A DNA stretch of 63,142 bases, counting the filler, from Olpidium bornovanus S191 (taxonomy: Eukaryota; Fungi; Olpidiomycota), in the NCBI GenBank assembly GCA_017911155.1. It is 32 parts of 32 records of this genome, joined end to end, with 100 filler letters (N's around TTAATTAATTAA, not from the genome) between each part and the next. Parts side by side here need not be neighbours in the genome. Positions count along the whole stretch, not along the records: positions 51,225 to 55,675 come from JAEFCI010011373.1; 31 more parts are not named here. The stretch is one strand, 5' to 3'. Below are positions 52,970-54,460 of the stretch, in pieces. The stretch's first letter is position 1, and each line of letters begins with the position of its first letter. Under the pieces are notes generated by a model, which was given only the letters and a program-made list of their open reading frames with translations, did no database searches and had not been told where the DNA came from. The translations under genes were made by a program, and so were the position numbers.

Positions 52970-53265
52970 TAGGTTACCAAGGCCCGCGGCCCGCGGATGC
53001 AGGTGTGGCACGGCACCAACGACGACAACTTGCGCTATCCCAACTACGGCAAAAACATCAAGCAGTGGACGAACGTGGCGGGGAAAAAATCAGCCGGACG
53101 CCGACCACGACCGACCGTCCGCAGCAGACCTGGGCGCGCACCCGCTGCCACCTCGGTGGCACCGTCCAGGTCGCGGGCATCATCCTGCAGGGCGGCCCGC
53201 ACAACCCTCGTCGTCGCCGGGATGGCCCAGTACGCCGTCGACTTCCTCGGTTGTGTTCCATTAGG
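52970..53265 (+). pseudogene. Bacterial-type PHB-depolymerase/acetylxylan esterase family (CE1), 3' fragment with frameshifts
   Basis: Reconstructed GYQGPRP/RMQVWHGTNDDNLRYPNYGKNIKQWTNVAG/ISRTPTTTDRPQQTWARTR..VQVAGIILQGGPH/TLVVAGMAQYAVDFLG. Resembles actinobacterial GYTG.RPRMQLWHGT.D.TLRYPNFGEEIKQWTNV. No introns, very high GC3, about 3 frameshifts. Confidence 0.8.
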
Positions 53266-53307
53266 ACCGCCCCCGCGCCCTGCGCTGCGGTGGCCGAGTC
53301 GGGCGAT

Positions 53308-53830
53308 TCAGCGGGTGGCGGGACCGGTCCAGCCTGCCGGGACGTGGCCGATGCGGACCCGTTGCGGGTGGTCGCCGACCGGTACGGAGAGGGTCTTCTG
53401 GCCGGCGGCGAAGTCGATCGTGGTGATCTGGTCGGACCCGCTCTCGGAGATCACACGCTGGCGGCCGTCCCTGCTGACAGTGGCCCAGTAAGGGCTTCGA
53501 GGCCGTGACGAGCGGGCCCTGCTTGCAGCGAAACCGCGGTCGAGACGACGGTGGCGTAGTCGCCCATGGACCCGGCGGCGCACAGCTCGCTGCCGTTGAA
53601 GTTCGTGGACAGGCCGTGGTGCCGCGAGTCGTTGACGAGCGTCTTGCGGTCGTCGCTGGTGTTCGAGTTCTTCGGCAGCGTCTTCACGCGGGTGATCGTG
53701 TCGGTGGCGACGTCGTATTCGATGAAGCCGTTGAAGAACGAGACCTGGAAGTAGAGCTTCGACAAGTCGGGGAGCACACCGCCGGCCGCACGGAGGTCAG
53801 CGCCCCGGTGAATTCGCGGTTGACGGTCAC
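53308..53830 (-). pseudogene. Actinobacterial-type YncE/YVTN beta-propeller protein, 3' half with frameshifts
   Basis: SVRPAV/PDLSKLYFQVSFFNGFIEYDVATDTITRVKTLPKN..DDRKTLVNDSRHHGLS..LCAAGSMGDYATVV/GPLVTASKP/YWATVSRDG..VISESGSDQITTIDFAAGQKTLSVPVGDHPQRVRIGHVPAGWTG*. Closely matches Streptomyces-type proteins as I recall them; TGA at 53308-53310. Confidence 0.8.
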
Positions 53831-53949
53831 CGGAGCGGGCGCGGGCGCGGCGATCAGGCGAGAGCGATGTCGTTCGAATCGCATCGGCAACCGCACCGCT
53901 GCCACAGGGACCCGAGCAGTCCCCTCCTGCGCCTCCACGCCCGGTGGCG

Positions 53950-54460
53950 CACGTTCAGCAGGTGTCGAAACCCGTCGTCGGTGGCGTCGCTGCGGTGATC
54001 GGCGTGATCGGGCATAGTGATCGTCGCGAGCACGTTTTCCCGACTGAGCAAGCGGTGAACGATGAAAACGTTCCCATTCCCGGTGCGGTGAGAGGCGTGT
54101 TCCTCCAGCCCAAAATGGGGTAGAAGGACCTCATAGAAATCACCGCCTTCCTGTCTCGCAAGCTGGCCAGCCGGTTCCGGGGCTGCCGGGGGGGGGGTAG
54201 CGCTGGCGCATGAATCAGCGGGGTGATGATGAACGCGATGAACTCGCCGCCGCGGGTGTCGACGACGAGCAGCCGGTTGAACCGGTCCGGGACGGCGTTG
54301 GTTGCGTCGTCGGCCGCCCGCAGGCCGAGGCCCCTGACCTCGGCACCCTTGTCGTCGGTGGTCATCTCGAACACCGCTGCGCAACCGGTCGAATTTGACC
54401 TTGCGGCCGTTGACCTCGAACCCGTAGGTGGGAACAGCCAGCTACCCCGTTGATCTGCCC
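53950..54460 (-). pseudogene. Unidentified intronless, high-GC3 bacterial-like ORF fragment(s), frameshifted
   Basis: WLF/PTYGFEVNGRKVKFD/AVFEMTTDDKGAEVRGLGLRAADDATNAVPDRFNRLLVVDTRGGEFIAFIITP; codons almost all end in G/C. Family not recognised. Confidence 0.45.

What the first reader, a model, noticed from the sequence alone, without database searches (positions are those of the whole stretch)
52970..54460. Decayed actinobacterial DNA embedded in a fungal contig (candidate bacteria-to-fungus transfer)
Seen: ~1.5 kb of intronless, homopolymer-poor, very high-GC3 sequence. It holds the 3' end of a CE1/PHB-depolymerase esterase (+) and, 43 bp away and convergent, the 3' half of a YncE-like beta-propeller (-), then a third ORF. 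That tail-to-tail spacing looks like native bacterial gene order. The same gap-free contig carries intron-containing host genes on both sides (secreted protein at 51907, PRE10 at 54776). Each bacterial ORF has about 3 frameshifts plus substitutions, as decayed as the neighbouring copia relic. A live contaminant should give intact ORFs, so I infer an old, non-functional insertion from a soil or root actinomycete. The esterase family acts on plant xylan, which fits a root niche.
Basis: partly seen in the sequence, partly recalled or inferred. Interest (0 to 1): 0.85.

Follow-up and report, generated by a model that had tools for sequence, protein, structure and literature searches.

The report
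Dead Lentzea-like DNA inside a eukaryotic genome
About 1.46 kb of broken gene fragments from a soil actinomycete of the genus Lentzea (or a close relative) sits beside a proteasome gene in a eukaryotic, probably fungal, genome; it looks like a real but non-functional fossil of bacterial DNA uptake, not contamination.

Summary
Window 52972-54432 is actinobacterial DNA, and it is a mosaic rather than one collinear piece.

- 52972-53264 (+): the 3' end of a PHB-depolymerase-type esterase.
- 53265-53307: a 43-bp spacer.
- 53308-53793 (-): the 3' half of a YncE-like beta-propeller gene, 86-88% identical in DNA to its closest Lentzea and Pseudonocardiales relatives.
- 53794-54178: 385 bp that match nothing.
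- 54179-54432 (-): an internal piece of an unlinked Lentzea lipoprotein gene.

The propeller fragment nests inside a Lentzea clade on a branch 3-4 times longer than its neighbours. I counted 11 frame-breaking indels. Substitutions specific to the window fall evenly on codon positions 1, 2 and 3, which indicates neutral decay of about 7-8%.

Contigs from three other sequencing runs carry the same indels. Two of them bridge the left junction into host sequence. The same runs hold the neighbouring PRE10 gene in spliced form, so they are RNA and the block appears to be transcribed. The right junction has no independent support.

One Pseudonocardiales MAG has the same esterase and propeller genes in convergent order, but with one extra gene between them.

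Verdict: a genuine, old, dead-on-arrival bacterium-to-eukaryote DNA insertion. It is a new member of a known kind. That the host is a fungus is plausible but not proven.

The parts
52972..53264 (+). 3' end (about the last 95 codons plus the stop TAG) of a PHB-depolymerase/CE1-type esterase gene. The 5' two thirds are absent, and there are four window-specific insertions (+1, +5, +1, +1).
   Evidence: NCBIfam NF050058, E 1.8e-7, on 52973-53089. 80% DNA identity to the L006 esterase over 296 nt with the stop codon conserved. The L006 gene hits Pfam Esterase_PHB at E 3.7e-15.
53265..53307 (.). 43-bp spacer between the two convergent stop codons. Its outer bases still align to the 3' flanks of the two genes in L006. 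The middle 24 bp stand where L006 has about 1.04 kb holding a trypsin-like protease gene.
   Evidence: Alignment of the window to the reverse complement of L006; L006 ORF list.
53308..53793 (-). 3' half (about 160 codons plus the stop) of a YncE-like beta-propeller gene. The 5' half is absent, and there are five window-only indels (-1, +2, +1, +1, +1).
   Evidence: 68-84% amino-acid identity to genes in 14 actinobacterial genomes, best in Lentzea; 87-88% DNA identity to L001 and L006. Every one of 50 bacterial homologues stops matching at 53757-53795, mostly 53788-53795. Tree placement.
53794..54178 (.). Unassigned 385 bp (GC about 0.62-0.69, weak coding-like phase). Origin unknown: donor-specific DNA, filler DNA or host DNA.
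   Evidence: No match by phmmer against 1.84 billion representatives, Atlas, plasmids, metagenome peptide scan, the 57 fetched loci or Rfam.
54179..54432 (-). Internal fragment (codons ~64-148 of 219) of a Lentzea-type lipoprotein gene that NCBI names 'YncE family protein'. It has indels of -2 and +1, and a G10 run that replaces conserved sequence.
   Evidence: 72-80% amino-acid identity to 21 proteins of about 218 aa, mostly Lentzea. 88% DNA identity to L015 and 84-86% to the Lentzea and MAG loci L018-L021.
54776..55228 (-). Host gene next to the block: the last exons of a proteasome alpha type-3 (PRE10) orthologue. They are exon 55088-55228, a GT-AG intron at 54806-55087 (which holds a ~140-nt poly-C tract), and a last exon 54776-54805 ending in the stop. 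The 3' UTR reaches at least 54590.
   Evidence: PDB phmmer: PSMA3 E 1.7e-12, yeast PRE10 E 1.6e-6. Contigs of X1, X3 and X4 jump from 54807 to about 55090, and the skipped stretch reads CT..AC on the + strand. Translation.
52825..52971 (.). Host-side flank of the left junction. Independent contigs carry it joined directly to the esterase fragment.
   Evidence: X3 contig spans 52825-53093 with 0 differences. X4 contig spans 52905-53382 with 2 differences and 0 gaps.

Best explanation
Window 52972-54432 is a fossil of bacterial DNA integrated into a eukaryotic (probably fungal) chromosome.

Inferred steps: DNA from a Lentzea-like actinomycete (Pseudonocardiales) entered the nucleus. At least two unlinked donor fragments were joined and ligated into a chromosome break about 350 bp downstream of the PRE10 stop codon, most likely by end-joining. 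The fragments are the esterase 3' end with the propeller 3' half and an internal lipoprotein-gene piece, with 385 bp of unknown origin between them.

No fragment carries a complete gene, so the insertion was probably non-functional on arrival. It has since drifted neutrally: about 7-8% substitutions at sites that are invariant in the bacteria, and 11 frame-breaking indels. It encodes nothing now. It appears to be transcribed at a low level, perhaps as read-through from PRE10.

Shown here: bacterial origin, the clade of the donor, truncation, the decay pattern, presence in other runs, and the left junction. Inferred: a single event, end-joining, and non-function from the start.
For: **Origin**
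- The propeller fragment is 86-88% identical in DNA to its closest Lentzea and Pseudonocardiales genes.
- It nests in a clade with Lentzea sp. NPDC051838, L. aerocolonigenes, Lentzea sp. NPDC006480 and MAG BP_312 (SH-like support 0.99, UFboot 82-99).
- The lipoprotein fragment is 72-80% identical in protein to Lentzea proteins.
- The esterase fragment matches the esterase of the same MAG, which lies convergent to its propeller gene.

**Decay**
- The indels are absent from all bacterial homologues.
- Window-specific changes at sites invariant in close relatives fall 10/8/11 (propeller) and 6/7/4 (lipoprotein) on codon positions 1/2/3. Bacterial controls have 1-13 such changes, most often at position 3.
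- 15 changes hit sites invariant in all 14 genomes.
- dN/dS against close relatives is 0.21-0.38, against 0.05-0.20 among those relatives.
- The terminal branch is 0.16-0.18, against 0.03-0.05 for relatives in the same clade.
- The two fragments show equal decay (7.2% and 8.0%), which fits one event.

**Mosaic**
- Homology to all 50 propeller homologues stops at 53757-53795, mostly 53788-53795, in mid-gene.
- The lipoprotein gene is not within 10 kb of the propeller gene in 14 genomes, and the reverse holds in 4 loci.

**Integration**
- Contigs of X3 (2012), X4 (2023) and X1 (2024) hold block pieces at 99% identity or more with no gaps.
- X3 and X4 bridge the left junction, and X1 bridges the 54178/54179 joint.
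- X4 and X1 differ from the window by a few SNPs, so they are not the same data.
Against: - No independent contig bridges the right junction; 54235-54589 is uncovered.
- None bridges the 53793/53794 joint by 31 nt or more on both sides.
- X3 may be the sample the assembly came from.
- A whole-genome run with the same species label (X5) gave no reads at all, so no depth test was possible.
- 385 bp of the block cannot be shown to be bacterial.
- The host's identity as a fungus was not established.
- A single event and end-joining are inferences.
- 9 of the 11 indels are insertions, a pattern also seen in some long-read errors, although contigs of other runs show the same lengths over every indel except those at about 54374 and 53775.
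Confidence: 0.8

Rival explanations
1. Assembly chimera or contamination: reads of a co-cultured or soil actinomycete were mis-joined into the eukaryotic contig, and the frameshifts are sequencing errors at homopolymers.
For: - The contig has extreme homopolymers: about 140 C, 26 T, and G10-12 runs.
- Two frameshifts lie at A6 and G10 runs, and 9 of 11 indels are insertions.
- The right junction lacks independent support, and X5 gave no reads.
Against: - Contigs of three other runs from 2012, 2023 and 2024 carry the block with zero gaps relative to the window. That coverage includes the G10 run and nine of the eleven indel sites; those at about 54374 and 53775 lie outside or at the last bases of these contigs.
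- Two contigs continue from the block into host sequence on the left.
- Substitutions also show relaxed constraint, which sequencing errors would not produce at 7-8%.
- Three truncated fragments of unlinked genes joined together is not what a live contaminant gives.
Confidence: 0.04
2. A once-functional horizontal gene transfer. A complete esterase and/or propeller gene was acquired and used by the host, then lost its function and was trimmed by later deletions.
For: - Esterase_PHB/CE1 enzymes are a class that would be useful to fungi.
- The esterase-propeller pair keeps a bacterial neighbourhood, so a longer piece may have arrived.
- The block seems to be transcribed.
Against: - Both genes lack their 5' parts, and the breaks abut other foreign or unknown DNA rather than host DNA.
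- Window-specific changes are already uniform over codon positions, with no sign of a period under purifying selection in the host.
- Nothing resembling a eukaryotic promoter, an intron or codon adaptation is evident; GC3 is still 0.9-1.0.
Confidence: 0.1
3. The block has been co-opted as non-coding RNA or as part of a long PRE10 3' UTR, so it is kept because its transcript matters.
For: RNA-type contigs (PRE10 is spliced in the same runs) cover much of 52825-54234 in three runs, at k-mer depth 2-5 against 5-7 for PRE10.
Against: - Contigs cannot give strand, ends or continuity with PRE10, and 54235-54589 is uncovered.
- There is no Rfam match.
- The decay looks neutral.
- Low-level read-through transcription of intergenic DNA is common (general knowledge).
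Confidence: 0.06

Closest known systems
Bacterium-to-fungus horizontal gene transfers (functional genes described in surveys of fungal genomes, e.g. PMC2459174 for Candida parapsilosis)
   Same: A bacterial donor and a eukaryotic (probably fungal) recipient. The foreign sequence nests phylogenetically inside a bacterial clade and is physically linked to host genes.
   Different: Published cases are mostly intact, expressed genes retained by selection. Here no gene is complete, all pieces are frameshifted, and fragments of unlinked donor loci are joined.
Non-functional lateral DNA transfers into animal genomes (Wolbachia-derived nuclear insertions) and organelle-derived NUMTs/NUPTs (general knowledge)
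   Same: Dead-on-arrival fragments inserted at chromosome breaks, often as rearranged mosaics, that decay neutrally and are sometimes transcribed at a low level.
   Different: The donor here is a free-living soil actinomycete, not an endosymbiont or organelle, so there is no permanent intracellular source of DNA.
Esterase_PHB (PF10503)/CE1 esterases and YncE-like beta-propellers (PF21783) of Pseudonocardiales, as in MAG BP_312 contig JAVXWK010001086 (L006)
   Same: 80% and 87% DNA identity, the same convergent orientation, and conserved stop codons and 3' flanks.
   Different: The window holds only the 3' parts and lacks the protease gene that lies between the two genes in the MAG. Both pieces are pseudogenes.

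Membership tests
Integrated bacterium-to-eukaryote lateral DNA transfer | The sequence nests within a bacterial clade in a phylogeny | tested here: met
   The propeller fragment lies inside a Lentzea/Pseudonocardiales clade, SH-like 0.99, UFboot 82-99.
Integrated bacterium-to-eukaryote lateral DNA transfer | Physical linkage to host genes on both sides, shown by data independent of the assembly | tested here: inconclusive
   The left junction is bridged by X3 and X4 contigs. The right junction (54235-54589) is not covered by any run.
Integrated bacterium-to-eukaryote lateral DNA transfer | Not explicable by a living contaminant | tested here: met
   Truncated genes, 11 indels absent from all bacterial homologues, and substitutions spread evenly over codon positions. 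Contigs of other runs show the same lengths at nine of the eleven indel sites.
Integrated bacterium-to-eukaryote lateral DNA transfer | The host flanks are eukaryotic | tested here: met
   PSMA3/PRE10 orthologue, E 1.7e-12, with a GT-AG intron removed in contigs of three runs. Fungal identity itself was not tested.
Esterase_PHB / PHA-depolymerase-type (CE1) esterase | Sequence homology to the family | tested here: met
   NCBIfam NF050058, E 1.8e-7, on a 39-aa piece, far below the full-length cut-off as expected for a fragment. 80% DNA identity to a gene with Pfam PF10503, E 3.7e-15.
Esterase_PHB / PHA-depolymerase-type (CE1) esterase | A complete alpha/beta-hydrolase domain with the catalytic serine, in an open frame | tested here: not met
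   Only about the last 95 codons of about 308 are present, broken by four indels. It is a pseudogene fragment, not a member enzyme.
YncE-like beta-propeller | A complete propeller in an open frame | tested here: not met
   Only about the last 160 of at least 377 codons are present, with five indels. Pfam YNCE hits only weakly: E 0.088 on the fragment and 7.9e-5 on the L006 protein.
   No Pfam rve hit, no PDB hit and no homologue. There is only a by-eye TPQxNGxAER-like motif.

The most novel reading that the evidence does not exclude
A free-living soil actinomycete, not an endosymbiont, contributed a concatemer of several unlinked genome fragments to a fungal nucleus in one event, and it persists as a transcribed fossil. 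If such dead-on-arrival mosaics prove common in fungal assemblies, they would give a direct, selection-free measure of how often bacterial DNA reaches and integrates into fungal chromosomes. In that case the raw influx behind fungal HGT would be much larger than the count of functional transfers suggests.
Probability: 0.3. Interest if true: 0.7.

Novelty: new member of a known kind. Interest (0 to 1): 0.55.

Why it matters
Claims of bacterial genes in eukaryotic assemblies are usually clouded by contamination. Here the decay itself, together with independent contigs that carry the same breaks, excludes a living contaminant.

Non-functional, fragmentary bacterial insertions are rarely documented outside hosts with endosymbionts. 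Each one is a selection-free record of DNA influx.

The mosaic of unlinked donor fragments hints at the integration mechanism: end-joining of fragmented foreign DNA.

The equal 7-8% decay of two fragments offers a molecular clock for the event, once the host's neutral rate and sister genomes are available.

The finding has no functional consequence for the host that I can see.

Tried and rejected
1. **'Third ORF' as one gene.** The 110-aa frame 53857-54186(-) gave only a chance hit to a repetitive protein in 1.84 billion representatives. The Atlas, plasmids and a metagenome peptide scan also gave nothing. The weak NCBIfam hit to N-hydroxyarylamine O-acetyltransferase (E 0.056) was dropped once one search identified the piece as a Lentzea lipoprotein gene.
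2. **Extending the propeller homology upstream of 53793.** Lenient blastn and tblastx found nothing.
3. **Looking for the unassigned 385 bp near the lipoprotein or propeller genes.** None of the 57 loci holds it, and Rfam has no match.
4. **A donor with the exact 43-bp tail-to-tail arrangement.** None of the 36 metagenome loci or the 13 other genome loci has the esterase nearby.
5. **Host identity.** The left-hand exon 51608-51907(-) has no homologues. The putative copia ORF has none either and no Pfam or PDB hit. The Atlas was uninformative on the PRE10 exon and on the right flank.
6. **Exact-product look-up of the 108-aa ORF.** Nothing on record.
7. **Read depth from raw whole-genome reads.** X5 gave 0 reads, so there was no test.
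8. **RIP-like mutation bias.** Rejected: GC>AT 11 against AT>GC 9.
9. **My by-eye idea that both flanks are consecutive parts of one copia integrase, and that GTAGGT (52969-74 and 54424-29) is a target duplication.** No tool supports it, and a 6-bp repeat has about a 10% chance expectation.

Full report
**What is in the sequence**

The piece (51225-55675) has a GC-rich core of 0.62-0.73 between about 53000 and 54400. Its flanks are more heterogeneous and carry extreme homopolymers. Codon-phase GC reaches 0.93-1.0 at 53520-53760 and 0.90-0.95 at 54180-54360, typical of high-GC actinobacterial coding DNA. Six-frame translation shows protein-like stretches that switch frame repeatedly.

**Esterase and propeller**

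- The 39-aa piece 52973-53089(+) hits NCBIfam 'extracellular catalytic domain type 1 scl-PHA depolymerase' at E 1.8e-7.
- A genome-collection scan with the 84-aa propeller piece returned 14 actinobacterial loci, eight of them Lentzea. Amino-acid identity is 68-84% and DNA identity is up to 88%.
- In one locus, L006 (Pseudonocardiales MAG BP_312), the neighbourhood is propeller (+), then a 319-aa trypsin-like protease (-), then a 308-aa esterase (-). That esterase carries Pfam Esterase_PHB at E 3.7e-15.
- The window's esterase piece aligns to the esterase's 3' end at 80% over 296 nt, with the stop codon conserved. The propeller piece aligns at 87% over about 500 nt.
- The 3' flanks of both genes still align. 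The 24 central bases of the 43-bp spacer stand where the MAG has about 1.04 kb with the protease gene.
No other genome or metagenome locus has the esterase nearby.

**The block is a mosaic**

- All 50 bacterial propeller homologues stop matching the window at 53757-53795, mostly 53788-53795, in the middle of their gene.
- Searching the well-phased stretch 54189-54383(-) found 21 proteins of about 218 aa, mostly from Lentzea, at 72-80% identity. NCBI names them 'YncE family protein', and one is annotated as a lipoprotein.
- At the DNA level the window holds only codons ~64-148 of that gene (54179-54432). Identity is 88% to Logan contig L015 and 84-86% to Lentzea genomes and the same MAG BP_312.
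- This gene does not lie within 10 kb of the propeller gene in any of the 14 genomes, nor the propeller within 10 kb of it in four loci.
- Between the two pieces lie 385 bp (53794-54178) that match nothing I could search.

**Decay**

- Relative to all bacterial homologues the window has five private indels in the propeller piece, four relative to L006 in the esterase piece, and two in the lipoprotein piece.
- At sites invariant among the five closest propeller homologues the window has 29 private substitutions, spread 10/8/11 over codon positions 1/2/3. The same test on each bacterial sequence gives 1-13, most often at position 3.
- Fifteen window changes hit sites invariant in all 14 genomes.
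- The lipoprotein piece gives 6/7/4, or 17 of 212 invariant sites.
- dN/dS to close relatives is 0.21-0.38, against 0.05-0.20 among them.
- In ML trees the window sits in a supported clade with Lentzea sp. NPDC051838, L. aerocolonigenes, Lentzea sp. NPDC006480 and MAG BP_312 (SH-like 0.99, UFboot 82-99). Its terminal branch is 0.16-0.18, against 0.03-0.05 for the others in that clade.
- There is no GC-to-AT or RIP-like bias.
- The similar private divergence of the two unlinked fragments (7.2% and 8.0%) fits a single arrival. That is an inference.

**Is it really in the host genome?**

- Logan contigs of three other runs hold parts of the block at 99% identity or more and without any gap. They are X3 (2012, organism B), X4 (2023) and X1 (2024), the last two labelled organism A and from different studies.
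- X3 covers 52825-53093, 53151-53789 and 53784-54073.
- X4 covers 52905-53382.
- X1 covers 53154-53418 and 54047-54234.
- Nine of the eleven indels, including the G10 run, lie well inside these contigs and therefore exist outside this assembly; those at about 54374 and 53775 were not checked this way.
- X3 and X4 bridge the left junction by 147 and 67 nt of host sequence. X1 bridges the 54178/54179 joint.
- X4 and X1 differ from the window by a few SNPs, so they are other isolates or alleles.
- Nothing covers 54235-54589, so the right junction rests on the assembly alone.
- The raw-read whole-genome run X5, with the same species label, gave no reads at all, so no depth test was possible.

**Host context**

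- On the minus strand, 55088-55228 encodes the C-terminal part of proteasome alpha type-3/PRE10 (PDB phmmer E 1.7e-12 to PSMA3, 1.6e-6 to yeast PRE10).
- Contigs of X1, X3 and X4 jump from 54807 to about 55090. With the 3-nt ambiguity, the skipped stretch 54806-55087 reads CT..AC on the + strand, which is a GT-AG intron on the gene's strand. Splicing creates a conserved '...AAK|ES...' acidic tail that ends at 54776.
- Hence these runs are RNA, and the block is represented in RNA at k-mer depth 2-5 against 5-7 for PRE10.
- The host is a eukaryote. Intron size and splice sites are compatible with a filamentous fungus, but I could not prove that.
- The 'copia relic' to the left is not detectable by Pfam, PDB or homologue search.

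**Interpretation**

The best reading (confidence about 0.8) is an old, dead-on-arrival integration of fragmented DNA from a Lentzea-like soil actinomycete into intergenic DNA downstream of PRE10, followed by neutral decay.

- Contamination or chimerism is very unlikely (about 0.04).
- A formerly functional transfer that was later trimmed (about 0.1) is disfavoured by the truncations abutting other foreign DNA and by the absence of any trace of purifying selection.
- Co-option as RNA (about 0.06) is untested.

**Novelty**

Bacterium-to-fungus transfer is known for functional genes (for example PMC2459174). Decayed mosaics of bacterial DNA are known mainly from hosts of endosymbionts. This is a new member of that known kind, with an unusual free-living donor. 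Interest is moderate, at 0.55.

Noticed in passing
window 54893-55030: A poly-C tract of about 140 nt (interrupted by one G and one A) lies inside the PRE10 intron 54806-55087. It could be real or an assembly artefact. No independent contig covers it, because the other runs are spliced RNA.
   Followed up: partly
window 54188-54197 and 53080-53089: Host-style homopolymers have arisen inside the bacterial DNA. A G10 run stands where the bacterial homologues have three other bases inside the run (GTT, ATG or GTC on the gene strand). A +5 insertion creates GGGGAAAAAA. Nine of the 11 indels are insertions. X1 has a T at 54193 inside the G run.
   Followed up: partly
window 52825-54234: RNA-type contigs of three runs (PRE10 is spliced in the same runs) cover most of the block at a depth similar to PRE10, so the dead block seems to be transcribed. 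Strand and transcript ends are unknown.
   Followed up: partly
window 52969-52974 and 54424-54429: The hexamer GTAGGT occurs at both ends of the block as a direct repeat. It may be microhomology or a target duplication, but the chance expectation is about 10%.
   Followed up: no
   Followed up: partly
window 51330-51545, 51919-51938, 52150-52176: There is AT-rich low-complexity DNA (GC 0.24-0.34) and poly-T runs of 20-26 nt between GC-rich segments, giving a strongly bimodal composition in the host intergenic DNA.
   Followed up: no
L006 1278-2237 (-): In MAG BP_312 a 319-aa trypsin-like serine protease gene lies between the esterase and propeller genes. It is absent from the window's 43-bp spacer. 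The same MAG also carries the lipoprotein gene on another contig (L020).
   Followed up: partly
run X5: A 47.7-Gb whole-genome run with the same species label as the RNA runs X1 and X4 gave no read on 2.7 kb from 1.9 Gb sampled. The label may belong to a host or a mixed sample rather than to the organism of this window.
   Followed up: no
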